From the NCBI RefSeq assembly GCF_046119375.1, contig NW_027362762.1, forward strand, positions 928,388,001-928,452,000: a stretch of 64,000 nucleotides of DNA, read 5' to 3'. A program made the position numbers and the translations under genes. Position 1 is the first letter of the stretch; the number at the start of each line of letters is the position of its first letter. Below the pieces are notes generated by a model that saw only the letters and a program-made list of their open reading frames with translations, was not told where the DNA came from and did not search any database. The DNA is from Phyllobates terribilis. Its lineage: Eukaryota. Positions 1 through 22,069 of this stretch are shown here, in pieces.

Positions 1-402
1 GAACCTCATCCGGAGGTCTGCCTCAGTAAGATCCTCAAAGACAGCCTGTAACTTTTGGAAGATTGCGGACACTGACTCCTGGTCTGCGGCCGACCATGTT
101 TCCACTTCCCGTTCCGCAGCACCGGTCGGTTGTCCTAATACAACAGCAGCTCTTTGTTTGCCTGTCATGGAGTACATGTCCAAGATACCACATATCTTCC
201 GTTTGAATCCAGACAGGGTATCTGGTTTGCCGTTGTACTGGGGGAGCCACTTTGCTCCAGGAATGTACGGTAGAGTTATAGGAATGACAGGGGTTACAGG
301 CGCTGCTGGTGGAGCGGCCGCCTCGGTCTGCCCGGCGTCGGTCGCTGGTTGTACTTCAGGGACGTTGGCCGGTACTCCGGTGTTGTGCTGTTAGTCGGAC
401 AT
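1..402 (-). pseudogene. Gag N-terminus with an in-frame stop at codon 4
   Basis: Manual translation gives ATG(402) TCC GAC TAA, then ...ITLPYIPGAKWLPQYNGKPDTLSGFKRKI..., matching MPYIPGAAWLPQYSGESHTLSDFKERL of the gag at 31446. Confidence 0.85.
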
Positions 403-2598: not shown

Positions 2599-4107
2599 CA
2601 TATATTTTAATAGAACAGGGGTTCTCTTCCTCAAAATAAAAATAAAAACATCCCTTTAACTGCTACCAATGAGTTAATAATATTTGTGACCTGGACTCTC
2701 CCACAAAAAAAATAATTTTCAAGGGGCACTCCATATCTACTGAAAGAGATATGTTCTGCACAGAGTGCACAGACACAGAATTGCAGAGTTTGGAAAGTAA
2801 AGAGGTGAGTGCGCCGCACCTTGTGTCAATAAATTTTTCCAGTTCAGTTGAGTCCATTACACTGTCGCTCTCTTCTTATACGTGGGCAGGTTGTTTTGGA
2901 AATCGATTGTCATTCCATATTAGTCTGAGTTATTTTATCACTTGTGGCAGCTCGATAACAAATCTACGCTCTTTCATTGTGCTAGTGGTATCAACAATGC
3001 CCAGAGGGGTTCAGCTTAATATAGCGTGCTAAATGGTAATGGAAAATTAACAAGCTCTTCCATGCATGGAGGAAGGTGTAGTAAGGGCAATGTGCTTGTC
3101 CAAGGACATTGGAAATCATTACAGAGACATGGCTGCCAAACTGGCACATTATATAATTTTGTTGTGTACTATATTTGTACAGGGCCGGGAAAACTTATGT
3201 TGGTGGCCTAGGTAAATGAGGCCAATAGCGCCCCTTCCCTCCTAGCAAAAGGATGGGTCAGAAAGTAAGGTGACAGGACCCCTAATGCATCACCCCCTCT
3301 CCGATGGGTCAGGTAACAAGCTCTGACGACCACTTCCACTAGAATTGCAACCGTTTTCACCAAAAAATACACGCAAAAGTTAAAAAAATCGGTTTACTTT
3401 AGGAGTGAGGCTTGAAAGGAGGTAAATTTCGCAGTTAGATGTAGAATTACTCATTGTTTGTGGATCTTTTTTCCCACGATACCAGGGACAAATAGCGATA
3501 TTCATCCCTAATGTAGAAGGAAAAAATTTGAAAATCCGCGCTGCTGGTGAATGAAGGCAATTTTTTTTCCTTCTGCATTATCTAACTTGGTCTCTGGACC
3601 TGTGGACCTTCTGCAGCTGGGATTACACACTTTTCTAATGTTGTGTGATCACAATTTAATCAGGTTAGTGTAACCTTTATTCATAGAATAGACCCATCAT
3701 CACTACATGAATATACCACCAGAAACATCTTCACTACATGAATACTTCAACAGAACTGCCACCTGTACACGAATACAGCATGAGATCTACTATCAGTACA
3801 GGAACATGACACCAAAACCACTATCACTTTTTTTGCAAGCTGTATTAGTCGCATGAAAAACACAAACACCATCAGACTTATCCCTTTAACTATAAAGTGG
3901 TCTGGTTGGTTTCCATTAGGGTATCTATCAAATGCTGGACACCTTGACTGAAACCAAATGGGCCCCCATTATATTTCAGCTATATTAGCTTACATGACCC
4001 TCCTTGGGTTGGACATAAAATATAGTATGGGATGAATATCCTAAGGAAGTAATTAAAAGCACAATAGGGTTTTATCCGGTTTAAAATCGATTCAATGAAA
4101 AAAATTT

Positions 4108-4911
4108 GGGCGCCAAATTTAAATATCGGCCGCGACCAATCACCGATCTTGGCTCCACATTTAAACACCGCTGTGCTCATTGGTCGCCGACGCTGGGCGC
4201 GACCAATCACCGATTTTGGCGCCACATTTAAATAGCGTCCGCGACCAATCAGTACAGCGGTGTTTAAATGTGGAGCCAAGATCGGTGATTGGTCGCGGCA
4301 GATATTTAAATTTGGCGCCAAAATCGGTGATTGGTCGTGGGCAGCGCCAGCGACCAATCAGCGATTTTTAACACAAATGTCCGGACCTTTGTAACACCAT
4401 GCTGATACTATGGGGACATCAGCGGCTAGGGTGTGAAGGGAGGACCGGGGAGCGGCGCTGCGGGTCGGGATACTTCTGCTGCGAGCGCCCGCTCATGTCC
4501 CTGGTTCTCGCAGCGGAAGTATCCGCACAGACAGCGCCGCTCCCCGGTCCTCCCTTCACACCCTAGCCGCTGATGTCCCCACAGTATCCGCATGGTGTTA
4601 CAAAGGTCCGGACATTTGTGTTAAAAATCGCTGATGGGTCGCTGGCGCTGCCCGCGACCAATCACCAATTTGAGCGCCAAATTTAAATATCGGACGCGAC
4701 CAATCACCGATCTTGGCTCCAGATTTAAACACCGCTGTGCTGATTGGTCGCGGCCGATATTTAAATTTGGCGCCCAAATCGGTGATTGGTCGCGGGCAGC
4801 GCCAGCGACCCATCAGCGATTTTTAACACAAATGTCGGACCAATAAGCGACGCGGGATTTCCTGGACAGACAGACAGACAGACAGACGGGATAAGACAAT
4901 TATATAGTAGA
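4108..4911 (-). mobile_element. 3'-truncated non-autonomous Helitron with a large internal palindrome
   Basis: 5' end A|TCTACTATATAA at 4911 followed by (GTCT)n, as in the copies at 8125 and 19631; CCAAT satellite units present; no CTAG 3' end found; left boundary approximate. Confidence 0.75.
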
Positions 4912-5009
4912 TAAATACAGCACTAGAACCACCATCAGTACTTGGCAACAAGAACAAAGCTTAGTACAGAAATCAATTGCAATTTCAGGTTAGCGCTATA
5001 TACATTTGT

Positions 5010-6096
5010 AACGCATGTACCTATAACTCTCAGTATGTCCTTAACAATGGTAATGTGATGCTGGGAGTTGTTGTTACCAGCAATTATCAGACTATGGACC
5101 ATACACAGATAAACATTTACATCCAGGTACCTTACAGCTGATGTGTTGTCTCATTGGAGTCATTTTTAACCCTTTCATCTCCATCTCGTCCAGATGCCAT
5201 GATGACTTTTCATAGCCTGACCAGGCCCTCATCCCTAGCAAGTACTCCCGTTGGGGCCTATATAATTATCACCAGTAAAGACCCTGGGACTGCACTATCT
5301 TGTCTCTGTGTTCCTTGCAGTGCCAGCACTCACAGCACTAGAACGCCCTGCACAATCACCACCATCATCCAGTCACGCTGCCCTGAAGCTACACTCCTCC
5401 TGTGGGGAGTCACATCACCTTGCTGCACATACCATCAGCTTCAGCAGACTGCTCCGCACCGGCGGTTACCAATAACCGCAATCCACAGGTGGCTTAGTTG
5501 GACTATATATAACAGAGACAAATAGACTACCCTGGTTTGACCACCCTGGGTCACGGACCGGGTCGCCGCCACGGTGACTACAACCTCCAGCATCTACAGG
5601 CCCGGCTCCGGGTGCCCCCTACGGCCCAGGGGGCGCGTCACTAACTTTTCTCTAAACCATGTCCCAAGTTCACGCTGTCCTCTCTCCATATCCATACTGT
5701 GCCCCTTCTTCACACTATGCCCTGATACTGCCCATCATGCTTCCATCTCCAAACTGTGTCCCTTCCTCACATTGCCCCCCCCCACCACACACACACTATG
5801 ATGGTCACCAAAGCCCTCCACACAGTATTATATCCACCATGGCCCCCATACACAGTATAAAGTCCACCACAGCCCCCATATACAACGCATGTACCTACTG
5901 TATAACTCTCAGTATGTCCTTAACAATGGTAATGTGATGCTGGGAGTTGTTGTTATCAGCAATTATCAGACTATGGACCATACACAGATAAACATTTACA
6001 TCCAGGTACCTTACAGCTGATGTGTTGTCTCATTGGAGTCATTTTTAACCCTTTCATCTCCATCTCGTCCAGATGCCATGATGACTTTTCATAGCC
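5010..6096. repeat. Local duplication: A(5010-5217), B(5217-5885), A'(5884-6096), where B copies 6918-7586
   Basis: Direct sequence identity at an offset of 1701 bp (B) and ~875 bp (A), with a few substitutions and one 5-bp indel. Confidence 0.9.
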
Positions 6097-6340
6097 ACAG
6101 CTCGTCTCTATAAACTTCCCTCTTCTTCGGCCTTCTGTAACACAGTGCACTTAAAAATAAGAGTGTTATTATAATTCCCTATGCATAAAAATATCTGTCC
6201 ATATTGTGCCCTAAATAAGCCTCTTATGTTATATGGCCTCCACATTGTCTTTATGAATCATGGACTATACCGTGGCTGTCTCCTCTCCACTACTTTCCCT
6301 TTCACTCTCTATATCTCCATACTGTCCCCTGCCATGCTAA

Positions 6341-7341
6341 TGTGGCACTCCAGGGGGTCTGGTTGCCACAGTGGTAGTAATACCATGTCTGGGAGCAAAA
6401 CAGGAGTTTCCTGGTCAGGGAACACACTATATGCAACACCTCCTGCTCCAGACCAGAAAAGGGGAGGATCCTGCCCTATATAACAGGATCTGGAGGCGGG
6501 GTTAGTCAGTTTAGTCAGAAACAGGGCTGTAGTCCAGTTGAGGACACTAAGGAGCAAGGAGCTGAGGACTGGAACTTGAAGAGCTCATCCTAGCCGGAGT
6601 AGATACAGAGAACCGGACACCGGAGTCCGAGGCTGTGGGACCCTTCAAGCCCAGCAGCAGATACCGCAAGGCAGGAGATTGCAGGTCTCCTGGCCTACAG
6701 AAGCCCGGAGGCTCAGCCACACGAAAGGACCAGTACCGCCACAGAGGAGCGAGGAATACACGGGATCCGAGTCGCCAGCCATACGGGTGAGCACAGCACG
6801 TCACACTCAGGGACGTGGGCTACAACACGACTATAAGCGGGATAGCCAAAAGAGTACAGTCAGAACGGCAGGCCTACAACTTCACCTGGCCAGGGGAATT
6901 CTAGGATTGCTCCCAGACTGACCAGGCCCTCATCCCTAGCAAGTACTCCCGTTGGGGCCTATATAATTATCACCAGTAAAGACCCTGGGACTGCACTATC
7001 TTGTCTCTGTGTTCCTTGCAGTGCCAGCACTCACAGCACTAGAACGCCCTGCACAATCACCACCATCATCCAGTCACGCTGCCCTGAAGCTACACTCCTC
7101 CTGTGGGGAGTCACATCACCTTGCTGCACATACCATCAGCTTCAGCAGACTGCTCCGCACCGGCGGTTACAAATAACCGCAATCCACAGGTGGCTTAGTT
7201 GGACTATATATAACAGAGACAAATAGACTACCCTGGTTTGACCACCCTGGGTCACGGACCGGGTCGCCGCCACGGTGACTACAACCTCCAGCATCTACAG
7301 GCCCGGCTCCGGGTGCCCCCTACGGCCCAGGGGGCGCGTCA
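6341..7341 (+). mobile_element. Solo Gypsy LTR (1001 bp)
   Basis: TGTGGCAC...GCGCGTCA with 4-bp TSD CTAA (6337-6340 and 7342-7345); TATATAA at 6477-6483; AGTAAA at 6975-6980; homologous to LTR 24861-25870. Confidence 0.93.
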
Positions 7342-7479
7342 CTAACTTTTCTCCAAACCATGTCCCAAGTTCACGCTGTCCTCTCTCCATATCCATACTG
7401 TGCCCCTTCTTCACACTATGCCCTGATACTGCTCATCATGCTTCCATCTCCAAACTGTGTCCCTTCCTCACATTGCCCC

Positions 7480-8075
7480 CCCCCACCGCACACACACTAT
7501 GATGGTCACCAAAGCCCTCCACACAGTATTATATCCACCATGGCCCCCATACACAGTATAAAGTCCACCACAGCCCCCATATACAATATGAGGCCACCAC
7601 AGCCCCCCATGCAGTTATAGTAGCCTCCATACAGTATGATGTCCCCCACAGCCCTTTATACACATATATTATATACCCCACAGCATACACTATGATTGCC
7701 TCCATAGTTGCCCATACATAGTATGATGGCCATCACAGCCCATATAAAGTATGAAGCCCACCACAACCTCTTCATAAAGTATGATGGCCCCCATAGCCCT
7801 CTATACACAGTAAAATGTCCCCCATAGCCCCAAAAACAGTATGATGTTCTCCACAGTCCCCCATATACATTATAATGTTCCCCATAGTGTCCCACACAGT
7901 GTTTTGGGCCCTCACGACTGTCACACAGTAAAATGTCTCCTAAAGTCCTATACACAGTATGATGGACACCACAGCCCTTCACACAGTATAATGTCCACTA
8001 AAGACCCCCATACAGTATGATGTTCCCCACAGCCTCCTATATACAGTATAATGTCCCCCTCAGCCCTCTATATAC
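7480..8075. repeat. Degenerate minisatellite (CACAGTATGATG...CCCC units, ~20/40-bp period)
   Basis: Repeated cacagtat(g/a)at..cc.cca units; related tracts occur inverted at ~52270-52500 and ~54030-54220. Confidence 0.75.
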
Positions 8076-8124
8076 AGTTTGATACCCAATCATCCAACTC
8101 CCAGGCCAAATAATATAAAAAATA

Positions 8125-10032
8125 TCTACTATATAATCGTCTTATCCCGTCTGTCTGTCTGTCCTGGAAATCCCGCGTCGCTCATTGGTCCGGCAGCGGC
8201 CAATCAGCGCCGCGGGATTTCTGAAAAAAGATGGCGGCCGTTAGCGGCTCATTTGGCGGACGGAGGTCAGCGGGGAGATGAGTGGCGCTAGCAGCACAAC
8301 TACCCCGACCGGCGCTGCCTGTGCGGCTCCTTCTGCTGCGAGAAGCCGGGAGATGAGCGGCTGCTCGCAGCACAACTACCCCGACCTCCATGCGGCTAAC
8401 GTCGGAAGATCAGCGGCTTGGCCCGCTGATCTCCCGACAGCAGTGTGAACGGAGGACCGGGGAGCGGCGCCGCCAGTCGGGATGCTTCTGCTGCGAGCAG
8501 CAGCTCATCTCCCGGCTTCTCGCAGCAGAAGGAGCCGCACAGGCAGCTCCGCTCCCCGGTCCTCACTAATAAGGAGCCGCACAAGCAGCGCCGCTCCCGG
8601 GCCCACACTAATACGACGCTGATTGGTCGCGGTGGCCGGCCGCGACCAATCAGCGAGATGGGCGGCAAATTTAAACGCCGCTCTGCTGATTGGTCGCTGT
8701 GGCCAGCCGACCGTGACCAATCAGCGAGATGGGCGGCAAATTTAAACGCCGCTCTGCTGATTGGTCGCGGTGGCCGGCCGCAACCAATCAGCGAGATGAG
8801 CGGCAAATTTAAACACCGCTCTGCTGATTGGTCGCGGTGGCCGGCCGTGACCAATCAGCGAGATGGGCGGCAAATTTAAACGACGCTCTGCTGATTGGTC
8901 GCGGTGGCCGGCCGTGACCAATCAGCGAGATGGGCGGCAAATTTAAACGCCGCTCTGCTGATTGGTCGCGGTGGCCGGCTACCGCGACCAATCAGCGAGA
9001 TGGGCGGCAAATTTAAACGCCGCTCTGCTGATTGGTCACAGCCGGCCACCGCGACCAATGATCGAGATGGGCGGCAAATTTAAACGCCGCTCTGCTGATT
9101 CATCGCGGCCGGCAATCGCGACCAATCAGCGATATCGGCGGCAAATTTAAACGCCGCTCTGCTGATTGGTCGCGGTGGCCGGCCGAGACCAATCAGCGAG
9201 ATGGGCGGCAAATCTAAACGCCGCTCTGCTGATTGGTCGCAGTGGCCGGCCGCGACCAATCAGCGAGATGGGCGGCTAATCTAAACGCCGCTCTACTGAT
9301 TGGTCGCGGCCGCTGGCCGACCGCGACCAATCATCGAGATTGGCGCCAAATGTAAACACCGCTGTGCTGATTGGTCGCGGCCGTCAGCCGCGACCAATCA
9401 TCGATATGGGCGGCAAATTTAAACCCCGCTCTGCTGACTGGTTGCAGTGGCCGGCCGCGACCAATCAGCGATTTTGGTGCCAATTTGAAACACCGCTCTG
9501 CTGATTGGTCGCAACCACCGGCCGTGACCAATCAGCGATATTGGCGCCAAATTTAAACACCGCTCTGCTGATTAGTCGCGGTCTCCGGCCGCGACCAATC
9601 AGCAATATTGGCGCCAAATTTAAACCTCGCTCTGCTGATTAGTCGCAACCACCGGCCGTGACCAATCAGCGATATTGGCGCCAAATTTAAACACCGCTCT
9701 GCTCATTGGTCGCGGTTACCGGTCACGAATAACCAGCATTATTGGCGACAAATTTAAACACCGCTCTGCTGATTAGTCGCGGCCGTGACCAATCACCATT
9801 ATTGGCGCCAAATTGAAATAAAGCTCTGCTGATTGGTCGCGACCGCCGGCCGCAACCAATCAGCATTATTGCCGCCAAATTTAAACCCCGCTCCGCTGAT
9901 TGGTCGCGTTCGCTGGCCGCGACCAATCAGCATTATTGGCGCCAAATTTAAACTCCGCTCTGCTGATTGCGCCCGGTCGGCCGCATACCTATTCTAGAAT
10001 ACCCGATGCATTAGAATCGGGCCACCATCTAG
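8125..10032 (+). mobile_element. Non-autonomous Helitron (1908 bp)
   Basis: A|TC 5' end; 3' hairpin CCCGAT-8 nt-ATCGGG (10002-10021) then CTAG|T; no TSD; (GTCT)n near the 5' end. Confidence 0.9.
8618..9970. repeat. 67-bp palindromic satellite array inside the Helitron (~20 units)
   Basis: Unit CGCGACCAATCAGC-gagatgggcggcaaatttaaacgccgctct-GCTGATTGGTCGCG-gtggccggc, with a 14-bp internal inverted repeat. Confidence 0.95.
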
Positions 10033-10038
10033 TATATA

Positions 10039-11239
10039 TGACGCGCCCCCTGGGACATATTCCTTTTTGAGGGGAATACCCGGCACCGGATCAGATGGGG
10101 GGTTGTAGTCTCCGAGCGGCTGTGACCCGGTCCCGTGCCCAGGGCGTCAAGCTCAGTGTTATGTGGCAGCTTTACAGATGTTACTAAAGTTCTTTTGTGT
10201 CGACTACGCCACCCGTTGTGATGCGGACACTGTGGCCGCCGCTGCTGCAGGGTCCGCTGAGGCTGATGGTGGGTGCGCAGCTTGGTGGGATAACCCCCAA
10301 CGGGAGGGGTATAGCCTCAGAGGGGACAGGCGCAGAGGATGGGGGTTGTGGTGGTGCGATGCAGCCGGCAATGAAGACAGACTCGGGTTGTGCAGTTAAG
10401 GGTGTTTACTTACTGCTGATGTTGTACTGGTCACTCCAGCTGCTAGTGACCACCCGAGCCGTGCTGCGTCCACCAGGTCCTGGATCTGGCCAACCCCCAA
10501 ACAAGTCCAGAGCGTGGCCCTGAGCTCTCCCTCTGTCCTTTCTTCAGCCGTCCCCACCAGTGATTCACCTAGGTCCAGCTCCCTCGGGCCTTCTTTTGGG
10601 ACACCCTTGGCCCTGGGTTCCCTGACCCTTCATGTGGTGTGCCTTCGGGGTGAATGTGGTGGGTGACCGTGACAGACACTGCCCACGGTCTCCGGTCTCT
10701 GGCTGGGGAATGTCTTTGCCCCCACCAGCTTGGGTTCCGGTACCCTCTTGCTGACTCCTCACCCGGTGCTCTAATTTGGGTTCTTGGGTCCCTTCAGTCT
10801 TCCCCCTCTGGGTCTTTCTCTGCTCCACTCTCTCTCTCTCCAGGGCTGCTGTTTCCTTCTCTCTCCTCTCCAACTGACTTGTTCTCAGCGTCTGACCCTG
10901 ATCTAAGTTGGTGCCCTCCTTATATATCCCTCTATGTGTGAGCTCAGGTGACCAGCACCCAATGAGCTCCTATCACTACCCAGACTGCTCCCCCTATCTG
11001 CCCCTACACTACATGGGATGTACCACCCCCCTCCCACTCCAGCCAGGAACAGGCTCGGTTGTACCTGCACATTTCTAAGTGGGAGTACCGTCGGCCTGCT
11101 CCTCTGGAATGGGATGTATGTAGTGCATGCAGTCTATCTGAGCTCAGTTCCACACTCCTTCCTTACCCGGGAGTGGAATATCACACCTCTGGGTTGAGGT
11201 GCAATACCCCTGTAGCAGCCGAATCCTCAGGGTGCTACA
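10039..11239 (-). repeat. 3' LTR of the non-autonomous element
   Basis: TG...CA ends; AGTAAA poly(A)-type signal at 10405-10410 and TATATAA at 10920-10926 (minus strand). Confidence 0.95.
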
Positions 11240-11254
11240 TTCCCCCCTGGTAAA
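11240..11254 (-). promoter_or_regulatory. Polypurine tract
   Basis: TTTACCAGGGGGGAA abuts the LTR TG; the same 15-mer occurs at 25871-25885. Confidence 0.85.
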
Positions 11255-11753
11255 TCACAGCACGTCCTCGGGCTGTAAGACATAAAACACCAAAACATAC
11301 AAAATTTTTATATGAACATATAAAACATATAAACATTATATATATATAAAACTTTTTATATAAACATTCTCGTAGACTTCTCTTGTCTCTGGTTCCTCCT
11401 CCGGACACTGTGCAACGTGTGTCCGGGAAAAGTGCGACAGTCTCTTAGAAAAATCTGGTTTTCTTATAAAACCGGTAGGGGGCGCTTTAGGACGCGCAAC
11501 TATATACAGGGGAAGTTGGAAGTTGGCCGCTCTCAGTCCTCGGCCAGGTAGAGGAAAGGGAATGGCTGCTCACAGTCCTCAGCCTGTAGGATGAAGGGGT
11601 TAACGGGTAAAACAGTTCACTGGTCCCAACGGGGACTATTTTAGCAGCAACAGTTTCAGTTTCTATATACCCCGATTGGGTAACTATTTACAGCTCCTTC
11701 TCTGCCGCACTCAACGGCGTCTTCCTCCTGCTCTTTCTTGATATGATGTTTCT

Positions 11754-13163
11754 TCAGACCCGTCCGGGTCCTCTTGTGATGGGCGCGGTGGTGTTAGCAC
11801 CCGGGTTGCCCGGGCCTTGCGGCCAGGCCTGGGGTATCTGGAAGGTGAAGGGCACCGTAAGAACGGCGGCGCCCTGGGCTACCTGGCCTTGCGGCCAGGC
11901 CGGAGGCTCCGCGGAGGTAGGGGGCGCTGTTGGTGATGCGGCGCCCGGGGGTACTAGGCCTTGCGACCAGGCTGGTGGTATTTCCTGCTTTGTCACGCTC
12001 CGGGTCGAGGCGCGTGACGTCACAGGGGTCGCTGCGGCGGCTTCCGGTCGGGGCCTAGTCCATTGCGGTGACGTGGCGGCTACGGGCACAGCAGGGGGAC
12101 TTTCGGGCTCTGCGACGGGGAGCTGGGGCAGGTGGACGGTTTCTCGGCTTGGGGTATAGGCGTCCCCTTTACCTGCCTCCATGCGTTCGGCTCCCTTCTC
12201 GGCGCCGTCTCCGGCCTTGGGTCCTCCCGCGCCATCCTCAGAGGCGGTCTGCTTCCTCTTCCAGGGTAGCGTGCTCCGTTGACTGGTCTCAGCTTGCTGG
12301 GTCATCTCCCGGCTCCACTCCGCCAGTATCTCGCGCTGTACCCGGGCCATCCTCCTTGCGAGGCCCTCCAGGGCAGTTTGTGCACACTCCCGGTCTCGGG
12401 GGAGCTGCGCTAGGATCTCCGCTAGACCTAGCGGGGTTGTGGACTCTAGCAGGCTCCTGACCATCGGGTCGGTGCTGCTCTGCTCGGCTTCCGGCAGGCT
12501 CCTGGCCAGCGGGCCGGTGCTGCTCTGCCCTCCTTCCTCGGTCTCTAGCAGACTCCTGGCCAGCGGGCCGGTGCTGTTCTGCTTTCTTTCCATCTCCGGG
12601 TGAGCTTCTCCGCTACTCCTTGTTAGACCTCTTGCCTCCGGGTGCGCTCGCTCCAGACTCCTCCAAGCGACACCCATCTTTTCTCTTCTCTTTCGTCTCC
12701 TCCCACTTCGAGGGCGGTCCCGGGGCAACTCGGTGACTGTCAGCTCCAGGGGGAGTTCTTTCACGCTGACAGACACCTCCAGCATCACAGTCTCTGTTGG
12801 TGGGGGCGGTTTCCACTTTTGGCGCCATTTTCTGTCCCTGCCCACGATGGGATGTGGCCTCTTGCCCTCCTTTGGCACGCCCATAATGGCGTCCGCTGCT
12901 CTTCCAAGGCGGGAAATCTGCGGTTTTGGCGGGAAGCGTCGCCCAGTGGCGGGAAACTCTGCAGATGGCGGGAACAAGCTGGAAATGGCGGACAATCGGC
13001 GGGAAACGACTGGTGATGGAGTCCGATGGCGTGGACCCTCCGGAACCGGCAGGAGTCTTCTTTCTGAGGTAAACTTGCACTTTTCTTCAGGCACGCAGTA
13101 CCCGGTTGTTGTGGGCACGTAATCCTGCCGACTACGCCAAAGTTGACGCGCCCCCTGGGACAT
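11754..13163 (-). CDS. 469-aa ORF of unknown function (R/P/A-rich, internal repeats, short coiled-coil-like stretch)
   Basis: ORF track; the only long ORF in the element's sense direction. The ATG lies in U5 and the frame reads through the PBS; the first internal Met is at ~12884. Confidence 0.45.
   Translation of the reverse strand: MSQGARQLWRSRQDYVPTTTGYCVPEEKCKFTSERRLLPVPEGPRHRTPSPVVSRRLSAISSLFPPSAEFPATGRRFPPKPQISRLGRAADAIMGVPKEGKRPHPIVGRDRKWRQKWKPPPPTETVMLEVSVSVKELPLELTVTELPRDRPRSGRRRKRREKMGVAWRSLERAHPEARGLTRSSGEAHPEMERKQNSTGPLARSLLETEEGGQSSTGPLARSLPEAEQSSTDPMVRSLLESTTPLGLAEILAQLPRDRECAQTALEGLARRMARVQREILAEWSREMTQQAETSQRSTLPWKRKQTASEDGAGGPKAGDGAEKGAERMEAGKGDAYTPSRETVHLPQLPVAEPESPPAVPVAATSPQWTRPRPEAAAATPVTSRASTRSVTKQEIPPAWSQGLVPPGAASPTAPPTSAEPPAWPQGQVAQGAAVLTVPFTFQIPQAWPQGPGNPGANTTAPITRGPGRV
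13122..13139 (-). promoter_or_regulatory. Primer binding site, tRNA-Ser(AGA/TGA)-type
   Basis: Plus strand ATCCTGCCGACTACGCCA matches the recalled 3' end of vertebrate tRNA-Ser-AGA plus CCA; lies 4 nt from the LTR. Confidence 0.9.
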
Positions 13164-14344
13164 ATTCCTTTTTGAGGGGAATACCCGGCACCGGATCAGA
13201 TGGGGGGTTGTAGTCTCCGAGCGGCTGTGACCCGGTCCCGTGCCCAGGGCGTCAAGCTCAGTGTTATGTGGCAGCTTTACAGATGTTACTAAAGTTCTTT
13301 TGTGTCGACTACGCCACCCGTTGTGATGCGGACACTGTGGCCGCCGCTGCTGCAGGGTCCGCTGAGGCTGATGGTGGGTGCGCAGCTTGGTGGGATAACC
13401 CCCAACGGGAGGGGTATAGCCTCAGAGGGGACAGGCGCAGAGGATGGGGGTTGTGGTGGTGCGATGCAGCCGGCAATGAAGACAGACTCGGGTTGTGCAG
13501 TTAAGGGTGTTTACTTACTGCTGATGTTGTACTGGTCACTCCAGCTGCTAGTGACCACCCGAGCCGTGCTGCGTCCACCAGGTCCTGGATCCGGCCAACC
13601 CCCAAACAAGTCCAGAGCGTGGCCCTGAGCTCTCCCTCTGTCCTTTCTTCAGCCGTCCCCACCAGTGATTCACCTAGGTCCAGCTCCCTCGGGCCTTCTT
13701 TTGGGACACCCTTGGCCCTGGGTTCCCTGACCCTTCATGTGGTGTGCCTTCGGGGTGAATGTGGTGGGTGACCGTGACAGACACTGCCCACGGTCTCCGG
13801 TCTCTGGCTGGGGAATGTCTTTGCCCCCACCAGCTTGGGTTCCGGTACCCTCTTGCTGACTCCTCACCCGGTGCTCTAATTTGGGTTCTTGGGTCCCTTC
13901 AGTCTTCCCCCTCTGGGTCTTTCTCTGCTCCACTCTCTCTCTCTCCAGGGCTGCTGTTTCCTTCTCTCTCCTCTCCAACTGACTTGTTCTCAGCGTCTGA
14001 CCCTGATCTAAGTTGGTGCCCTCCTTATATATCCCTCTATGTGTGAGCTCAGGTGACCAGCACCCAATGAGCTCCTATCACTACCCAGACTGCTCCCCCT
14101 ATCTGCCCCTACACTACATGGGATGTACCACCCCCCTCCCACTCCAGCCAGGAACAGGCTCGGTTGTACCTGCACATTTCTAAGTGGGAGTACCGTCGGC
14201 CTGCTCCTCTGGAATGGGATGTATGTAGTGCATGCAGTCTATCTGAGCTCAGTTCCACACTCCTTCCTTACCCGGGAGTGGAATATCACACCTCTGGGTT
14301 GAGGTGCAATACCCCTGTAGCAGCCGAATCCTCAGGGTGCTACA
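13144..14344 (-). repeat. 5' LTR of the non-autonomous element
   Basis: Near-identical to 10039-11239 (one T/C difference noticed, at 10487 vs 13592); TATATAA at 14025-14031. Confidence 0.95.
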
Positions 14345-15286
14345 TATACATATTCACCTAATCCAGGCTCACCATCCTCACAGTCTCTATCTCATCTTCT
14401 ATCTTGTGTAACAGTGGACGCAGGCTGCACGATGCAGTGATGTCATCCATCTCGTCCAATGTCCCCTGTGTGGTGCCAGCCTCCAACAGGCTGCAAGTCC
14501 GAAGTAGCCTTTGGCCTGCCGGAGTAACCAGTGGAGCAGAGAGTTGGCTAAAGCTCCTCTGTCCCTGTCCTGGGCAGCGATCACATTTTCAATTATATTC
14601 GGAAATTAGGGAGGTTATATTGGCTTGGGTGCAGGTAGAGAGAGTGGTAAGTGATGTTAGTTCCAGGGGATCAGTGGCAGTGGAGATTGTAAAAGTGACA
14701 TTAAGTACAGTATTTTGTGGATTATAACACGCAATGTCTTATAGTTCGAATGTATCTGGCTGTTGCTGTGGGGAGAGGGCGGCTGTGGAGGAGCGGGTCA
14801 CAGGAGGCAGGTGCAGGGTCACAGGAGGAAGGATCCGGTGCTGGGGCTAACACATGTGCTCTCTATTAATGAATATGCACTGCTCCCCACACCCATAATC
14901 CCACCCACCTCTCTGCACTGAAGACCGTGCCAAGATATGTGTGGGACTATGGGCGTGGGGAGCAGTGAATATTCATTTTCTTTAATAGTGGGTACACGTG
15001 TTGGCCGCAGCCGCCAGCTTCCTGCAACGGCTACGTGATCACGTGTGTCCGCAATTAAGGAAAATAAATATTTACTGCTCCCCACGCCCATAGTCTCGGG
15101 CGTGGGGAGCAGTGAATATTCCGGCAGCTGTCGTCGGTGCGTGGGGGCGCATGGCATTGACGTCATACGCTGCGCTGCTTACAAGGTGAAGTCAGTAGAC
15201 GGCATCAGAAGAGGACGCCTCGCTGCGAGGGAGCGGAGGGAAGGTGAGTAGAATCGTTTATTCTTTTATTTGAGATGGGGGACCTA

Positions 15287-16916
15287 CAGTACAGACCAAA
15301 AGTTTGGACACACCTTCTCATTTAAAGATTTTTCTGTATTTTCATGACTATGAAAATTATACATTCACACTGAAGGCATCAAAACTATGAATTAACACAT
15401 GTGGAATTATATACTTAACAAAAAAGTGTGAAACAACTGAAAATATGTCTTATATTCTAGGTTCTTCAAAGTAGCCACCTTTTACTTTGATGACTGCTTT
15501 GCACGCTCTTGGCATTCTCTTGATGAGCTTCAAGAGGTAGTCACCGGAAATGGTCTTCCAACAATCTTGAAGGAGTTCCCAGAGATGCTTAGCACTTGTT
15601 GGCCCTTTTGCCTTCACTCTGCGGTCCAGCTCACCCCAAACCATCTCGATTGGGTTCAGGTCTGGTGACTGTGGAGGCCAGGTCATCTGGTGTAGCACCC
15701 CATCACTCTGCTTCTTGGTCAAATAGCCCTTACACAGCCTGGAGGTGTGTTTGGGGTCATTGTCCTGTTGAAAAATAAATGATGGTCCAACTAAACGCAA
15801 ACCGGATGGAATAGCATGCCGCTGCAAGATGCTGTGGTAGTTATGCAGGTTCGGTATGCCTGCAATTTTGAATAAATCCCCAACAGTGTCACCAGCAAAG
15901 CACCCCCACACCATCACACCTCCTCCTCCATGCTTCACGGTGGGAACCAGGCATGTAGAGTCCATCCGTTCACCTTTTCTGCATTGCACAAAGACACGGT
16001 GGTTGGAACCAAAGATCTGAAATTTGGACTCATCAGACCAAAGCACAGATTTCCACTGGTCTAATGTCCATTCCTTGTGTTCATTAGCCCAAACAAGTCT
16101 CTTCTGCTTGTTGCCTGTCCTTAGCAGTGGTTTCCTAGCAGCTATTTTACCATGAAGGCCTGCTGCACAAAGTCTCCTCTTAACAGTTGTTGTAGAGATG
16201 TGTCTGCTGCTAAAACTCTGTGTGGCATTGACCTGGTCTCTAATCGGAGCTGCTGTTAACCTGCGATTTCTGAGGCTGGTGACTCGGATAAACTTATCCT
16301 CAGAAGCAGAGGTGACTCTTGGTCTTCCTTTCCTGGGGCGGTCCTCATGTGAGCCAGTTTCTTTGTAGCGCTTGATGGTTTTTGCAACTGCACTTGGGGA
16401 CACTTTCAAAGTTTGCCCAATTTTTCGGACTGACTGACCTTCATTTCTTAAAGTAATGATGGCCACTTGTTTTTCTTTACTTGGCTGCTTTTTTCTTGCC
16501 ATAATACAAATTCTAGCAGTCTATTCAGTATGAATATCAGCTGTGTATCCACCTGACTTCTGCACAACACAACTGATGGTCCCAACCCCATTTATAAGGC
16601 AAGAAATCCCACTTATTAAACCTGACAGGGCACACCTGTGAAGTGAAAACCATTTCCGGTGACTACCTCTTGAAGCTCATCAAGAGAATGCCAAGAGTGT
16701 GCAAAGCAGTCATCAAAGCAAAAGGTGGCTACTTTGAAGAACCTAGAATATAAGGCATATTTTCAGTTGTTTCACACTTTTTTGTTAAGTATATAATTCC
16801 ACATGTGTTAATTCATAGTTTTGATGCCTTCAGTGTGAATGTACAATTTTCATAGTCATGAAAATACAGAAAAATCTTTAAATGAGAAGGTGTGTCCAAA
16901 CTTTTGGTCTGTACTG
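15287..16916 (-). mobile_element. Tc1/mariner transposon with DD38E (Intruder-type) spacing, full length (1630 bp)
   Basis: TA TSDs; 268-bp TIRs (15287-15554 and 16649-16916) with ~4 mismatches; intact transposase. Confidence 0.95.
15450..16502 (-). CDS. Intact transposase, 350 aa, DD38E catalytic triad
   Basis: GRPR linker, [18 protein letters not shown] and [11 protein letters not shown] motifs; 38 residues counted between the second D and the E. Confidence 0.95.
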   Translation of the reverse strand: MARKKQPSKEKQVAIITLRNEGQSVRKIGQTLKVSPSAVAKTIKRYKETGSHEDRPRKGRPRVTSASEDKFIRVTSLRNRRLTAAPIRDQVNATQSFSSRHISTTTVKRRLCAAGLHGKIAARKPLLRTGNKQKRLVWANEHKEWTLDQWKSVLWSDESKFQIFGSNHRVFVQCRKGERMDSTCLVPTVKHGGGGVMVWGCFAGDTVGDLFKIAGIPNLHNYHSILQRHAIPSGLRLVGPSFIFQQDNDPKHTSRLCKGYLTKKQSDGVLHQMTWPPQSPDLNPIEMVWGELDRRVKAKGPTSAKHLWELLQDCWKTISGDYLLKLIKRMPRACKAVIKVKGGYFEEPRI

Positions 16917-17144
16917 TATATACCAGGATGGGGGGACATATATACCAGAAAGGGAGCCATATATACCAGGATGAGGATCATATATACCAGGATGGGGATC
17001 ATATACTGTATACCAGGATGGGGATCATATATACCAGAATGGGGGCCATATATACCAGGATGGGGATCATATACTGTATACCAGGATGGGGATCATATAT
17101 ACCAGGATGGGGGCCATATATACCAGGATGAGGATTATATATAA
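16917..17144. repeat. 22-bp minisatellite (TATACCAGGATGGGG..CATA), resuming at 19632-19770 after the Helitron
   Basis: Tandem units visible directly; the array is split by the Helitron insertion. Confidence 0.9.
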
Positions 17145-19631
17145 CTAGATGGTGGCCCGATTCTAATGCATCGGGTATTCTAGAATAGGTATGCAGCCGA
17201 GCGGTATTTATATTTGGCGCCAAAATCGCTGATTGGTCGAGGCCGGCAACCGCGACCAATTAGCTAAGCGGTGTTAAAATTTGGCACCTATATCGCAGAT
17301 TGGTCACGGCCGGCGGTCGCGGCTAATCAGCAGAGCGGGGTTTAAATTTGGCGCCAATAATGCTGATTGGTCGCGGCCAGCGAACGCGACCAATCAACAG
17401 AGCGGGGTTTAAATTTGGCGGCAATAATGCTGATTGATTGCGGCCGGCGGTCGCGACCAATCAGCAGAGCGTTATTTAAATTTGGCGCCAATAATGGTGA
17501 TTGGTCACGGCCGCGACTAATCAGCAGAGCGGTGTTTAAATATGGTGCCAATATCGCTGATTGGTCGCGGCCGGCCACCACGACCAATCAGCGAAGCGGT
17601 GTTTAAATTTGGCGCCAATATCGCTGATTGGTCACGGCCGGTGGTTGCGACTAATCAGCAGAGCGAGGTTTAAATTTGGCGCCAATACTGCTGATTGGTC
17701 GCGGCCGGCGACCAATCAGCAGAGCGGTGTTTAAATTTGGCGCCAATATTGCTGATTGGTCGCTGCCGGAGACCGCAACTAATCAGCAGAGCGAGGTTTA
17801 AATTTGGCGCCAATACTGCTTATTGGTCGCGGCCGGCGACCGCGACCAATCAGCAGAGCGGTGTTTCAAATTGGCACCAAAATCGCTGATTGGTCGCGGC
17901 CGGCCACCGCAACCAATCAGCAGAGCGTTGTTTAAATTTGGCGCCAATCTCGCTGATTGGTCGCGTCTGGTGTCAGCGACCAATCAGCAGAGTGTTGTTT
18001 AAATTTGGCGCCAATCTCGCTGATTGGTCGCGTCTGGCGTCCGCGAAAAAAAGAGAAGAGCGTTGTTTACATTTGGCGGCAATCGCGCTGATTGGTAGCG
18101 GTCACCGGCGGCCGCGACCAATCAGCACAGCGGTGTTTACATTTGCCGCCCGTCTCGCTGATTGGTCGCGGCCGGCCACCACGACCAATGAGCAGAGCGG
18201 CGTTTAAATTTGCCGCCCATCTCGCTGATTGGTCGCGGTCGGCCACCGCGACCAATGAGCAGAGCGGCGTTTAAATTTGCAGCCTATTTCGCTGATTGGT
18301 CGCGGCCGGCGACCGCGACCAATCAGCAGAGCGGCGTTTAAATTTGCCGCCGATATCGCTAATTGGTCGCGGTGGCCGGCCGTGACCAATCAGCAGAGCG
18401 GCGTATAAATTTGCCGTCCATCTCGCTGATTGGTCGCGGTGGCCGGCCGCGATGAATCAGCAGAGCGGCGTTTAAATTTGCCGCCCATCTCGATCATTGG
18501 TCGCGGCCGGCCACCGCGACCAATCAGCAGAGCGGCGTTTAAATTTGCCGGCCATCTCGCTGATTGGTCGCGGTGGCTGGCTGCGACCAATCAGCAGAGC
18601 GGTGTTTAAATTTGCCGCCCATCTCGCTGATTGGTCGCGGTAGCCGGCCGCGACCAATCAGCAGAGCGGCGTTTAAATTTGCCGCCCATCTCGCTGATTG
18701 GTCGCGGTGGCCGGCCGTGACCAATCAGCGAGATGGGCGGCAAATTTAAACGCCGCTCTGCTGATTGGTCGCGGTGGCCGGCTACCGCGACCAATCAGCG
18801 AGATGGGCGGCAAATGTAGACGCCGCTGTGCTGATTGGTCGCGGTGGCCGGCCGTGACCAATCAGCACAGCGGCGTCTACATTTGCCGCCCATCTCGCTG
18901 ATTGGTCGCGGTCGGCCAGCCACCGCGACCAATCAGCAGAGGGGCATTTAAATCTGCCGCCCATCTCGCTCATTGGTCGCGGTGGCCACCGCGACCAATC
19001 AGCAGAGCGGTGTTTAAATTTGACGCCCATCTCGCTGATTGGTCACGGCCGGCCACCGCGAGCAATCAGCAGAGCGGCGTTTAAATTTGCCGCCCATCTC
19101 GCTGATTGGTCGCAGTTGGCCGGCCACCGCGAGCAATCAGCAGAGCGGCGTTTAAATTTGTCGCCCATCTCGCTGATTGGTCGCAGCCGGCCACCGAGAC
19201 CAATCAGCGTCGTATTAGTGTGGGACCGGGAGCGGCGCTGCTTGTGCGGCTCCGTATTAGCGAGGACCGGGGAGCGGTGCTGCCTGTGCGGCTCCTTCTG
19301 CTGCGAGAAGCCAGGAGATGAGCGGCTGCTCGCAGCAGAAGCATCCCGACCGGCGGCGCCGCTCCCCGGTCCTCCGTTCACACTTGCCAAGCCGCTGATC
19401 TTCCGACGTTAGCCACATGGAGGTCAGCGGCGCCGGTTGGGGTAGTTGTGCTGCTAGCGCCGCTCATCTCCCCACTGCATCGCCGCTGACCTCCGTCCGC
19501 CAAATGAGCCGCTAATGGCCGCCATCTTTTTTCAGAAATCCCGCGGCGCTGATTGGCCGCTGCCGGACCAATGAGCGACGCGAGATTTCCAGGACAGACA
19601 GACAGACAGACAGACGGGATTATATAGTAGA
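17145..19631 (-). mobile_element. Non-autonomous Helitron (2487 bp), same family as 8125-10032, ~30 satellite units
   Basis: Reverse-complement hairpin plus CTAG at 17145-17175; TC start at 19631; same internal palindrome and 67-bp array (~17210-19210). Confidence 0.9.
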
Positions 19632-22069
19632 CAAGATGGGCTCAATATGGGGATCATATATACCAGGATGGGGGCCATATATACCAGGATGAGGGTTATA
19701 TATAACAGGATGAGCCCAATATGGGGATCATATATATCAGGATGGTACAAGGATAGGGCACATATACAGGATGGGGGACATTAGTACAGATTTGGGGGAC
19801 ATTACACCCATAACAGTGTCAACAGCAGATTTCCCCCATAACAGTGCGTCATGACCACAAATTTTGCTTCAATTTTTTTTTATATTTTCCTCCTCTAAAA
19901 CCTAGGTGCGTCTTATGATCTGGTGCATCTTATAATCCACAAAATACGGTAGGGTAGTTAAAGTAGTTCTTTAGTTTAAAAAAAAATAATCATATTGACG
20001 AATGAGCTCTATGTGATGCCTAATTTACCCTGTAGAGGCACTGCAGGGAAATTTGAACAGTTACTCCTAGGTTTCCAAACAGATCATAGCTGATCACTGG
20101 AGACCTATAGGGGGACAGTTTGTGATCAGCTTAGTGCAAAATAGCTTACTCTCCAAAAATGTGCGGGAAGCTCCAGGGAAAAGGGGAGACCTCCTGGGCA
20201 AGTAGGCAATTTTCGTACACCTGAGTAAAATGAAACAAAACCTCCAAGACATGCACACTGCGCACCAACACATTTCCTGAAAGCCAACTGGCTAAAATTG
20301 GCAAATATGGCTTGTCGTTAAGGGACTCTTCTAACTGGTCGGAATCATGTAGGAGTTATCTGTGATGAGGTTAGGTTGTATGTGGTTGTAGCTTTAAGAA
20401 TAATTCCTAAAACAGGAGGTTATCTCACCACTGGGATCTCCAGCGATCCCAAGATTTGGGTTTTCTCTGGAACCTTGGAACCGGACTCTGTCCAGAATGG
20501 AGATAATTGAGCGCTGTGCACAACTTTTCTCCGGCAGTCCCATGGACAATAAATGGAGCAGTAGTTGAGCATGCTCACCTCCACTCCTTTCAAAATGGGG
20601 CGGTGTCAATCCTGGTCCCAAGATTACAGAGAGAGTCTCGTTCTTGAGATCCCTGGGTGTCTGAGCAACTGGTAAGTTATTCGCTACCCTGTCACATTAA
20701 CATAAGATTAAAATTATGTGACATAGGCCTCAATATATAGAGAGTTCTCAAGGCAAACGTAAAACATGGAATGTTCGGAGCCGGTTTAGTGATCCTGGAC
20801 AGTGATCCCTACACAATGTGTGCAGCACAGGAGAAGACCTGTAGAAGGGACATGATATCGGCTTTAGTAATTACTTGCAGACCGCTTCAGTTTACTCATA
20901 CATTTCTAGGAGGTAATACAGGAATGTCACAAAGCAGAGTTCTAAGAAAAGATGCTTCACCATAGTTCATGTGGAAGGCAAGTATTACTATCACAGACAT
21001 GTCACGAATGGCGACAGATCACTTTTAAATGGTGTTTTGAACATTTAGAGACTATCCTTACAAATAAATTTAGATCTAAAATATTCTGATCTTCTCAAAC
21101 TACGGAAATAAGTGGCTTAATAGAGCAATTTGGAACACATTTACAGTACTTATGTAATTAAAGATTTACAGGTCGAAATCCCAAGTACAGTATTCCTAGA
21201 ATTACCCTTTTAATTGGTTCTCTCATGCTGCTTCATGGGCCAGTCGTGATAATGGTCAGCAGTCAGACGGCTGCGTTTTTTTTTTTTTATGAACAAATCT
21301 CCGTGGATGAATATGTAAGCCTTTAAATGGTGGATTACTGTACACATACAGCCTGGGAAATATTTTACATTTTTTTCCAGCTTTGAATAAGCTGTAGTTT
21401 TCAAGGTTATTTTACAAAGTAATTAGATTGTCACTATGGCAGTATCCTACGGTGTGGAACACTGAGATATTCTAACACGGCACATAATGGAGAATTAGAA
21501 AGTTGTTAGAACAGCAGGTTTTGGTATCTGAAAGGTATAATCTAGTAATGTGGCGATTACTTGCAGTCTAGATGGACCCTACTAATGGACCTATAGACCA
21601 TCGGTGTCTATTTGGATCCATTGGTAAACTGGACTGTGGGCAAAAAAAGAGCAAAAGGTGGATCACTGAGGAGTGGAAAAATTTGGCCTGGTAAGAGAAA
21701 TCCAAATGTCTGTTGCACCATGCCGATATGGGGTCAGCATTTGAGGCACGCAGCATGAATCAGTGAACGCATACAGTCATGTGTCCAAAGTTCAAGCTGG
21801 TGGAGGTGTGGGAGGGTTTTCTTGGTATCTCGCTGGATCCTCTTGTACCTGTAGCCATGTCCCTTTCCATGTCCTGTTCTTAGCCTCATAAATGTGCATT
21901 TGGGGGCAGTGGCGTAGTCTTAAGACAAGGAATCTCTAAGCCATGCAAAGGAAAGCCTTTAGGGACTACCACATAGCAGGTGGTTCCTGGGAGAATTTTC
22001 AACTCCTCTAGGAGTCTAGAAAGTCTCCCCTTTTTCTGGATGCATAATAGATGTTTCAGGAAAGTTAGC

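What the first reader, a model, noticed from the sequence alone, without database searches (positions are those of the whole stretch)
8618..9970. Helitron satellite unit resembles a cell-cycle promoter module (CCAAT, CDE/E2F, CHR, CCAAT)
Each 67-bp unit has two GACCAATCAG boxes (NF-Y consensus) in opposite orientation. Between them lies GGCGG-caaa-TTTAAA (e.g. 8661-8675) or TTGGCGCCAAA-TTTAAA, and one unit has TTTGAA (9484-9489). A GGCGG-like CDE 4 nt upstream of a TTTGAA/TTTAAA CHR, combined with multiple CCAAT boxes, is the established layout of DREAM/MuvB-regulated G2/M promoters, and TTTGGCGC is an E2F site. The two complete Helitrons carry ~20 and ~30 CpG-rich units. Inference: a mobile multimerised cell-cycle promoter/enhancer, or a genome-wide sink for NF-Y, E2F and MuvB.
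Basis: partly seen in the sequence, partly recalled or inferred. Interest (0 to 1): 0.85.

Follow-up and report, generated by a model that had tools for sequence, protein, structure and literature searches.

The report
Helitron minisatellite of CCAAT-box hairpins
A young rolling-circle transposon (Helitron) carries 20 to 30 tandem 67-bp units that look like promoter pieces (strong NF-Y sites plus an E2F- or CHR-like box), but the two "opposite CCAAT boxes" are one hairpin-forming palindrome copied from the transposon's own 5' end, and no regulatory activity is shown.

Summary
A 67-bp tandem array (20 units at 8618-9969; 30 units at 17194-19208 on the other strand) lies inside two non-autonomous Helitrons, and every motif is at the stated coordinates.

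- The two "opposite" CCAAT boxes are the arms of one 15-bp-stem palindrome. A shorter version of it sits in the element's own 5' terminal region.
- The motif letters are unlikely by chance (about 6e-4 per 67-mer) and vary less than the rest (6% vs 16%). The excess variation lies mostly in the palindrome centre.
- After insertion, motif and non-motif positions change at similar rates.
- An intact CDE-N4-CHR is present in only 15 of 50 units, and an E2F 8-mer in another 15. The same letters also read as an Sp1 GC box plus a TATA-like box.
- CCAAT spacing is 24/43 bp and inverted, not the 31-33 bp direct repeats of G2/M promoters.
- CpG sites changed 2.7-8 times faster than other sites between the two copies, which points to germline methylation.
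- Public run contigs gave no information on transcription starts.

My reading is a Helitron-borne minisatellite derived from the 5'-end palindrome. It is probably a dense NF-Y site cluster serving the transposon lineage, not a demonstrated DREAM module.

First readers of this scan noted the same family in at least ten other windows of this genome.

The parts
8125..10032 (+). Non-autonomous Helitron, element 1 (1908 bp)
   Evidence: It starts with TCTACTATATAA after an A and ends with CTAG before a T. It has a 3' hairpin and no long ORF.
8173..8209 (+). Palindrome in the 5' terminal region (CGCTCATTGGTCC..GGCCAATCAGCG), homologous to the unit palindrome
   Evidence: Local alignment to the unit scores 35; the best of 1000 shuffles scores 26. 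It folds as a DNA hairpin of -17 kcal/mol, z -3.8.
8228..8239 (+). AAGATGGCGGCC box in the 5' region (resembles a YY1 site and contains an ATG)
   Evidence: Read directly from the sequence. The YY1 assignment rests on recalled consensus and was not tested.
8618..9969 (+). 67-bp tandem array, about 20 units. Units in the 5' half carry GGGCGGCAAATTTAAAC; units in the 3' half carry TTGGCGCCAAATTTAAAC.
   Evidence: TRF; unit alignment.
10002..10021 (+). 3' terminal hairpin CCCGAT-GCATTAGA-ATCGGG, 11 nt before the CTAG end (10029-10032)
   Evidence: The geometry matches the Helraiser right terminal sequence (RTS), whose palindrome lies 11 nt upstream of the end (PMC4778049).
17145..19631 (-). Non-autonomous Helitron, element 2 (2487 bp), same family
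   Evidence: Same ends as element 1. It is 94-96% identical to element 1 in the 5' region and at both array ends.
17194..19208 (-). 67-bp tandem array, about 30 units
   Evidence: TRF.
18760..18880 (-). Two units whose spacer is inverted between palindromes
   Evidence: units A2_06 and A2_07.
4080..4911 (-). Diverged, rearranged copy of a related subfamily. It has the 5' end TCTACTATATAA, an inverted internal duplication, and units that keep GACCAATCA and TTGGCGCCA(A/C)ATTTAAA.
   Evidence: inverted repeat I16 with 311-nt arms at 91%.

Best explanation
The array is the internal variable-number minisatellite of an abundant, young, non-autonomous Helitron family.

Shown:
- Each 67-bp unit is a 37-nt palindrome (GCTGATTGGTCGCGG..CCGCGACCAATCAGC) followed by a 30-nt spacer with a GC-rich core and CAAATTTAAAC.
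- The palindrome is a longer version of one that lies 48-85 nt from the element's own 5' end. The satellite therefore most likely grew out of the 5' terminal region.
- The array changes by gain and loss of units and by flips at the palindrome. The centre occurs in both orientations, two spacers are inverted, and the two copies have 20 and 30 units.

Inferred:
- Because the arms are near-perfect NF-Y sites, the array is probably a dense NF-Y site cluster with two non-overlapping footprints per unit.
- An E2F/Sp1-type GC core and an exposed TTTAAA lie between footprints. This is a generic CCAAT/GC/TATA-like, proliferation-type promoter or enhancer grammar that serves the Helitron lineage.
- It would do so by driving, or keeping open, the master elements in dividing germline or embryonic cells.
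- The individual inserted copies seen here are methylated in the germline and decay neutrally. They are not host-selected regulatory elements.
For: - Array and unit structure.
- Helitron ends.
- Homology of the unit palindrome to the 5'-region palindrome.
- Stable unit hairpin, -27 kcal/mol, z -7.5.
- Flipped centres GGTGGCCGGCC/GGCCGGCCACC and inverted spacers.
- The motif combination is improbable by chance (6e-4).
- Motif columns vary 6% against 16%; 3 of 67 circular shifts do as well.
- Variants that predate the two insertions avoid motif columns (15 vs 55, p 1e-5), while private post-insertion changes do not (19 vs 33, p 0.16).
- The diverged subfamily keeps the same boxes.
- CpG transitions are 8.6% against 3.3% at other sites (9.5% vs 1.3% in the 5' region).
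- The NF-Y contact range and 24-bp minimum spacing (PMC4982600) give footprints at unit positions -8..16 and 22..46.
- NF-Y binds tandem CCAAT repeats of ERV9/LTR12 even in closed chromatin (PMC3730095).
Against: - There are no binding, accessibility, methylation or transcription-start data. The run contigs were uninformative.
- Units are not independent. Concerted evolution and shared descent inflate the conservation statistics.
- Once the palindrome centre is excluded, motif columns are not significantly more conserved (p 0.12), and the MK-like (McDonald-Kreitman-style) contrast of pre- versus post-insertion changes is only a trend (p 0.07).
- Non-autonomous elements do not need a promoter, so the array may be neutral filler.
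- Whether the autonomous partner has the array upstream of RepHel is only an unchecked first-reader note (s1-234824).
Confidence: 0.5

Rival explanations
1. One reading: each unit is a DREAM/MuvB-regulated G2/M module (CCAAT, CDE, CHR, CCAAT). The Helitron is then a mobile, multimerised cell-cycle promoter or enhancer, or a genome-wide sink for NF-Y, E2F4 and LIN54.
For: GGCGG-N4-TTTAAA matches the published CDE/CHR layout, and TTTAAA binds DREAM as strongly as TTTGAA in vitro (PMC4176359). TTTGGCGC is an E2F 8-mer. These sit next to strong NF-Y sites, and the combination is unlikely by chance.
Against: - Only 15 of 50 units have CDE-N4-CHR and 15 of 50 have the E2F 8-mer.
- Column 55 (G/C) is split 23:20, so the CDE itself is not conserved.
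- CCAAT boxes are inverted at 24/43 bp, not direct at about 31 bp (PMC4982600).
- The NF-Y footprint overlaps GGCGG.
- CHRs function at transcription starts, and none is shown here.
- The letters also read as an Sp1 GC box plus a TATA-like box.
- CpG decay indicates methylation, which by recalled knowledge blocks E2F binding.
Confidence: 0.1
2. Neutral filler: the array is an ordinary transposon-internal minisatellite made by replication slippage at a hairpin-prone palindrome. The motif matches are inherited from the 5' region and have no function. Their apparent conservation comes from youth and homogenisation.
For: - Helitron-borne minisatellites are common: the 166-bp arrays of Heli2Xen in Xenopus (PMC12001565) and oyster Helentrons (PMC7492417).
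- Copy number varies (20 vs 30).
- Post-insertion changes are indifferent to motifs.
- Significance is lost once the palindrome centre is excluded.
- CpG decay.
Against: Pre-insertion variants avoid the motif columns 3-fold. The diverged subfamily keeps the same boxes while loops and linkers differ. The family with arrays is held by runs under three organism labels.
Confidence: 0.25
3. Cis-acting role in rolling-circle transposition: the repeated hairpins are copies of a 5'-terminal RepHel recognition or structure element. They would act like subterminal repeats that recruit the transposase or shape the single-stranded intermediate.
For: The unit palindrome is homologous to one in the 5' terminal region, and that region is essential for Helraiser transposition (PMC4778049). 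The predicted ssDNA hairpins are very stable. Successful non-autonomous copies keep the arrays although they need no promoter.
Against: Arm mutations are never compensated, so there is no support for a selected stem. No CTAG follows the unit hairpins at 11 nt, so they do not mimic the terminator. The diverged copy's 5' region has only the left arm at that place. No internal Helitron repeat with such a role is known to me.
Confidence: 0.12

Closest known systems
Caenorhabditis Helitrons carrying repetitive heat-shock elements bound by HSF-1 (PMC6927752)
   Same: Helitrons carry tandem, overlapping copies of a transcription-factor motif and spread them through the genome.
   Different: There, binding and effects on gene expression are shown. 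Here the factor would be NF-Y/E2F-type, the host is a vertebrate-like genome, and nothing is shown experimentally.
ERV9/LTR12 U3 tandem repeats with CCAAT (and GATA) motifs bound by NF-Y; the related R66 tandem repeat (PMC3730095; 24-bp CCAAT dimers in PMC4982600)
   Same: A transposon-borne tandem array of strong CCAAT boxes at the minimal 24-bp spacing.
   Different: That carrier is a retroviral LTR, not a Helitron. Its boxes are direct repeats, whereas here they are the two arms of a palindrome.
Bat Helitrons with captured host promoters (HelibatN3 / NUBPL; PMC4778049, PMC4224331)
   Same: A non-autonomous Helitron family that spreads promoter-like sequence. The 5' region here also has a CCAAT pair and an ATG-containing box.
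   Different: No host donor gene was identified here, and the promoter-like letters are multimerised as a satellite.
Helitron/Helentron-borne satellites (Xenopus Heli2Xen 166-bp minisatellite, PMC12001565; oyster Helentrons, PMC7492417)
   Same: An internal tandem array fills most of the non-autonomous element and varies between copies.
   Different: Unit length and sequence are unrelated. No factor-site grammar was reported for those arrays.
CDE/CHR cell-cycle promoters (CCNB1, CCNB2, CDK1; PMC4176359, PMC3287175)
   Same: The letters GGCGG-N4-TTTAAA together with nearby CCAAT boxes.
   Different: See the membership test: the spacing and orientation of the CCAAT boxes, the position at a transcription start, and conservation of the CDE are either not met or not testable.

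Membership tests
Canonical Helitron (non-autonomous) | 5' end TC and 3' end CTRR, with no terminal inverted repeats | tested here: met
   TCTACTATATAA at 8125, at 19631 (minus strand) and at 4911 (minus strand). CTAG at 10029-10032 and at 17148-17145.
Canonical Helitron (non-autonomous) | Short hairpin about 10-12 nt upstream of the 3' end | tested here: met
   CCCGAT..ATCGGG at 10002-10021, 11 nt before the end. The geometry matches Helraiser (PMC4778049).
Canonical Helitron (non-autonomous) | Insertion between A and T without target-site duplication | tested here: met
   Elements 1 and 3 follow an A, and both complete 3' ends are followed by T. Element 2 follows a G, which is one exception.
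Canonical Helitron (non-autonomous) | No RepHel gene (hence non-autonomous) | tested here: met
   No ORF of 200 aa or more lies inside either element.
NF-Y binding site | RRCCAATSR consensus | tested here: met
   19 of 20 and 25 of 30 units on the forward strand; 15 and 21 on the inverted arm. The consensus itself comes from recalled knowledge.
NF-Y binding site | Occupancy by NF-Y in vivo or in vitro | not testable with these tools
   No ChIP or EMSA data are available.
CDE/CHR (DREAM/MuvB) G2/M promoter | CHR hexamer (TTTGAA, TTTAAA or TTCGAA) | tested here: met
   TTTAAA in 15 of 20 and 22 of 30 units; TTTGAA once in each array. Validated CHR variants are listed in PMC4176359.
CDE/CHR (DREAM/MuvB) G2/M promoter | GC-rich CDE exactly 4 nt upstream of the CHR | tested here: inconclusive
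   Present in 8 of 20 and 7 of 30 units only. The remaining units have GGCGCC or mutated forms.
CDE/CHR (DREAM/MuvB) G2/M promoter | CHR on or next to a transcription start site | not testable with these tools
   The run contigs give no molecule ends (table 6: none).
CDE/CHR (DREAM/MuvB) G2/M promoter | Multiple CCAAT boxes as direct repeats about 31-33 bp apart | tested here: not met
   The boxes are inverted (two arms of a palindrome), 24 and 43 bp apart. The reference spacing is from PMC4982600 and PMC3730095.
CDE/CHR (DREAM/MuvB) G2/M promoter | DREAM/MMB binding and cell-cycle-dependent expression | not testable with these tools
   This needs experiments.
E2F site | TTTSGCGC | tested here: inconclusive
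   An exact match (as GCGCCAAA) occurs in 6 of 20 and 9 of 30 units, all in the 3' half of the arrays.
Transposon-borne minisatellite | Tandem array between the element's terminal regions, with copy number varying between copies | tested here: met
   20 vs 30 units, with both array ends 94% identical between the two copies.

The most novel reading that the evidence does not exclude
A vertebrate Helitron lineage has built its own promoter/enhancer as a satellite of NF-Y-plus-E2F sites. This would tie expression or chromatin opening of a rolling-circle transposon to S/G2 phase of dividing germline or embryonic cells, when the host replication factors it needs are present. It would parallel the S-phase dependence of other HUH-Rep replicons. 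By spreading thousands of such arrays it would also seed proliferation-responsive elements, or titrate NF-Y, across the genome.
Probability: 0.15. Interest if true: 0.75.

Novelty: new variant of a known kind. Interest (0 to 1): 0.4.

Why it matters
If NF-Y, and possibly E2F, really bind these arrays, this would be a vertebrate counterpart of the Caenorhabditis Helitron/HSF-1 case. It would be a DNA transposon spreading tens of factor sites per copy, in a genome that holds many copies. It would also suggest how a replication-dependent transposon times its activity. If they do not bind, it is one more Helitron-borne minisatellite. It would then be a useful warning that palindromic satellites can mimic promoter grammar.

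Tried and rejected
- Rfam scan of 3900-20000: no RNA family.
- Compensatory changes between the palindrome arms: none found. All arm mutations are one-sided, so there is no support for a selected stem.
- Second small hairpin (GGCGGC..GCCGCT) in the GGGCGG-type units: it is broken, not compensated, in the TTGGCGCC-type units.
- Unit hairpins as mimics of the 3' terminator: rejected, because no CTAG lies 11 nt downstream.
- Coding repeat: rejected, because 67 is not a multiple of 3 and there are no long ORFs.
- Laying reads from public runs: only short Logan contigs of a high-copy family were obtained. The profile looks similar in the 'RNA?' runs and in runs of unknown type, and no molecule ends are listed. 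This says nothing about promoter activity.
- Scans of metagenome and viral contigs for the unit or the palindrome: 0 hits, so no outside copies were available for comparison.
- Asymmetry between arms: the core pentamer is intact in 36 of 48 units on the left arm against 46 of 48 on the right. This is nominally significant, but it rests on a few inherited variants and disappears at the 10-mer level.
- Literature searches for a Helitron linked to NF-Y, CCAAT or E2F found no description of this array.

Full report
**What is there.** Tandem Repeats Finder reports a 67-bp period with 20.1 copies at 8618-9969, and 30.1 copies at 17194-19208 on the opposite strand. GACCAATCAGC occurs 67 times in the window against 0 expected, all inside Helitron copies. 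The arrays have a CpG observed/expected ratio of 1.33-1.35, against 0.59 for the window.

**The carriers.**
- Element 1 is 8125-10032 on the + strand. Element 2 is 17145-19631 on the - strand.
- Both begin with TCTACTATATAA. Both end with a 6-bp-stem hairpin (10002-10021 in element 1), then 11 nt ending in CTAG, then a T.
- This is the geometry described for Helraiser, whose palindrome lies 11 nt upstream of the CTAG end (PMC4778049).
- Neither element contains an ORF of 200 aa or more, so both are non-autonomous.
- A third, diverged and internally inverted copy lies at about 4080-4911 on the - strand.
- The two complete copies are 94-96% identical in the 5' region and at both ends of the array. 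They differ in unit number in the middle. The array is therefore an inherited, variable-number minisatellite of the family.

**Anatomy of the unit.** Aligning 48 units gives this layout:
- A 15-bp-arm palindrome, GCTGATTGGTCGCGG - centre - CCGCGACCAATCAGC.
- A spacer, either GAGATGGGCGGCAAATTTAAACGCCGCTCT (5' half of both arrays) or GATATTGGCGCCAAATTTAAACACCGCTCT (3' half).

The two "CCAAT boxes in opposite orientation" are thus one palindrome. As single-stranded DNA the unit folds at -27 kcal/mol, z -7.5. The palindrome centre occurs in both orientations (GGTGGCCGGCC and GGCCGGCCACC), and two units of element 2 have inverted spacers at 18760-18880. Flips at the palindrome are therefore part of the array's dynamics. 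Arm mutations are never compensated. The diverged copy keeps GACCAATCA and TTGGCGCCA(A/C)ATTTAAA, so the E2F-like form is probably ancestral and the GGCGG "CDE" form derived.

**Origin.** The element's own 5' terminal region holds a shorter version of the same palindrome at 8173-8209 (CGCTCATTGGTCC..GGCCAATCAGCG). Its alignment score to the unit is 35, against a maximum of 26 in 1000 shuffles. It is followed by AAGATGGCGGCC at 8228-8239. The satellite therefore most likely arose from the promoter-like 5' region of the Helitron.

**Chance and conservation.**
- In 200,000 random 67-mers with the unit's first-order composition, an NF-Y 9-mer together with an E2F 8-mer or a CDE-N4-CHR occurs at about 6e-4. 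The 10-mer RRCCAATCAG alone occurs at 5e-4.
- Motif columns differ from the consensus in 6% of units, against 16% for other columns. Only 3 of 67 circular shifts of the annotation do as well.
- The difference persists among non-CpG columns (p 0.015). It fades once the hypervariable palindrome centre is left out (p 0.12).
- Other stretches that are not named motifs (CAAA, CCGCTCT) are equally conserved.
- I ran a McDonald-Kreitman-style (MK-like) comparison of changes before and after insertion on 14 collinear unit pairs. Variants shared by both copies, which predate the insertions, avoid motif columns (15 vs 55; 3.5% vs 10.9% per site, p 1e-5).
- Private differences that arose after insertion do not (19 vs 33; 4.4% vs 6.5%, p 0.16). 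The contrast is a trend (odds ratio 0.47, p 0.07).
- Units are not independent, so these p-values are optimistic.

**How well does the cell-cycle grammar fit?**
- TTTAAA is a validated CHR and binds DREAM as strongly as TTTGAA. A CDE lies 4 nt upstream, and CHRs sit on or next to transcription starts (PMC4176359).
- Here, CDE-N4-TTTAAA is intact in 8 of 20 and 7 of 30 units. The E2F 8-mer is intact in 6 of 20 and 9 of 30.
- The distinguishing column (G or C) is split 23:20.
- Published NF-Y contacts run from -7 to +17 around CCAAT, with a 24-bp minimum spacing (PMC4982600). Applied to the unit, the two boxes occupy positions -8..16 and 22..46.
- These footprints are compatible with each other. 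However, the second overlaps GGCGG at 44-48 and leaves only GGCAAATTTAAA free.
- The boxes are inverted at 24 and 43 bp. G2/M promoters use direct repeats of about 31-33 bp.
- The same letters also read as GGGCGG (Sp1 core, from recalled knowledge) plus a TATA-like TTTAAA, which is a generic CCAAT/GC/TATA promoter.
- The NF-Y part is therefore well founded at sequence level. The DREAM-specific part is not.

**Methylation proxy.** Between the two copies, CpG sites carry transitions at 8.6% (21 of 245). Other sites differ at 3.3% (28 of 836), odds ratio 2.7, p 0.001. In the non-repetitive 5' region the figures are 9.5% against 1.3%, odds ratio 8, p 5e-4. This is the signature of germline CpG methylation. 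The arrays are still CpG-rich because they are young.

**Expression and distribution.**
- Runs under three coded organism labels hold the array's words.
- Laying four runs gave only short Logan contigs of about 100 bp, with similar profiles in the 'RNA?' runs and runs of unknown type. No molecule ends were listed. Transcription from the array is neither supported nor excluded.
- Rfam finds nothing.
- Scans of metagenome and viral contigs found no further copies.

**Comparison with what is known.**
- Helitrons that carry repetitive factor sites are documented for HSF-1 in Caenorhabditis (PMC6927752).
- Helitrons that spread captured promoters are documented in bats (PMC4778049).
- Helitron-borne minisatellites are documented in Xenopus and oysters (PMC12001565; PMC7492417).
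- Tandem CCAAT repeats bound by NF-Y are documented in ERV9/LTR12 (PMC3730095).
- I found no paper linking a Helitron to NF-Y or E2F sites.
- The termini resemble in style those of the horizontally transferred Heli1Xen1 family (TC..TATATAA; hairpin CCCG..CGGG; CTAG). That is a lead only.

**Earlier notes of this scan.** First readers noted the same family, with the same reading, in at least ten other windows of this genome. One calls the units "CCAAT-box hairpins". Another says the array lies upstream of RepHel. None of these notes is checked, and I could not check them.

**Verdict.**
- The best reading is a Helitron minisatellite derived from the 5'-end palindrome. It is probably a dense NF-Y site cluster with a generic proliferative promoter grammar serving the transposon lineage. 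The copies seen here are methylated and decaying.
- My rough odds: transposon-level NF-Y cluster or promoter 0.5; neutral filler 0.25; cis role in transposition 0.12; true DREAM module 0.1.

Noticed in passing
window 16917-17143 and 19647-19806: Element 2 sits inside a 21-bp minisatellite (TATATACCAGGATGGGGATCA) that continues on both flanks. The upstream flank of element 1 (7507-8083) is also a 29-31-bp tandem repeat ending in TATA-rich letters, which suggests insertion into AT steps of other repeats.
   Followed up: no
window 10039-14344: An LTR element with 100% identical 300-bp LTRs (10039-10338 and 13144-13443) starts 6 bp after the 3' end of Helitron element 1. It is a very recent insertion next to the Helitron.
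   Followed up: no
window 4175-4485 and 4507-4817: The diverged Helitron copy is a near-perfect inverted duplication (311-nt arms, 91% complementary, 21 nt apart). It has no recognisable 3' end.
   Followed up: partly
window 8316-8382 and 8412-8429: Element 1 has private insertions of 63 and 18 nt relative to element 2, and they create a long inverted repeat in the 5' region. Contigs from other copies skip them (joint 8315 to 8383). Element 2 and some other copies have 11 extra nt after 8267.
   Followed up: partly
window 8228-8270: AAGATGGCGGCC is followed by a short open frame (ATG GCG GCC GTT AGC ...) and then GAG|GTCAGC. This resembles a captured promoter, first codons and splice donor, as in bat HelibatN3, but no donor gene was identified.
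   Followed up: no
window 15285-15558 and 16645-16918: A 274-nt inverted repeat pair (98%) flanks a 350-aa ORF (15450-16502, minus strand). It looks like a young DNA transposon with long terminal inverted repeats, lying directly beside element 2's flank.
   Followed up: no
window 9480-9489 and 17866-17875: The single TTTGAA unit in each array is the same inherited unit (GTGCCAATTTGAAAC). It carries an extra CCAAT pentamer overlapping the CHR-like hexamer.
   Followed up: partly
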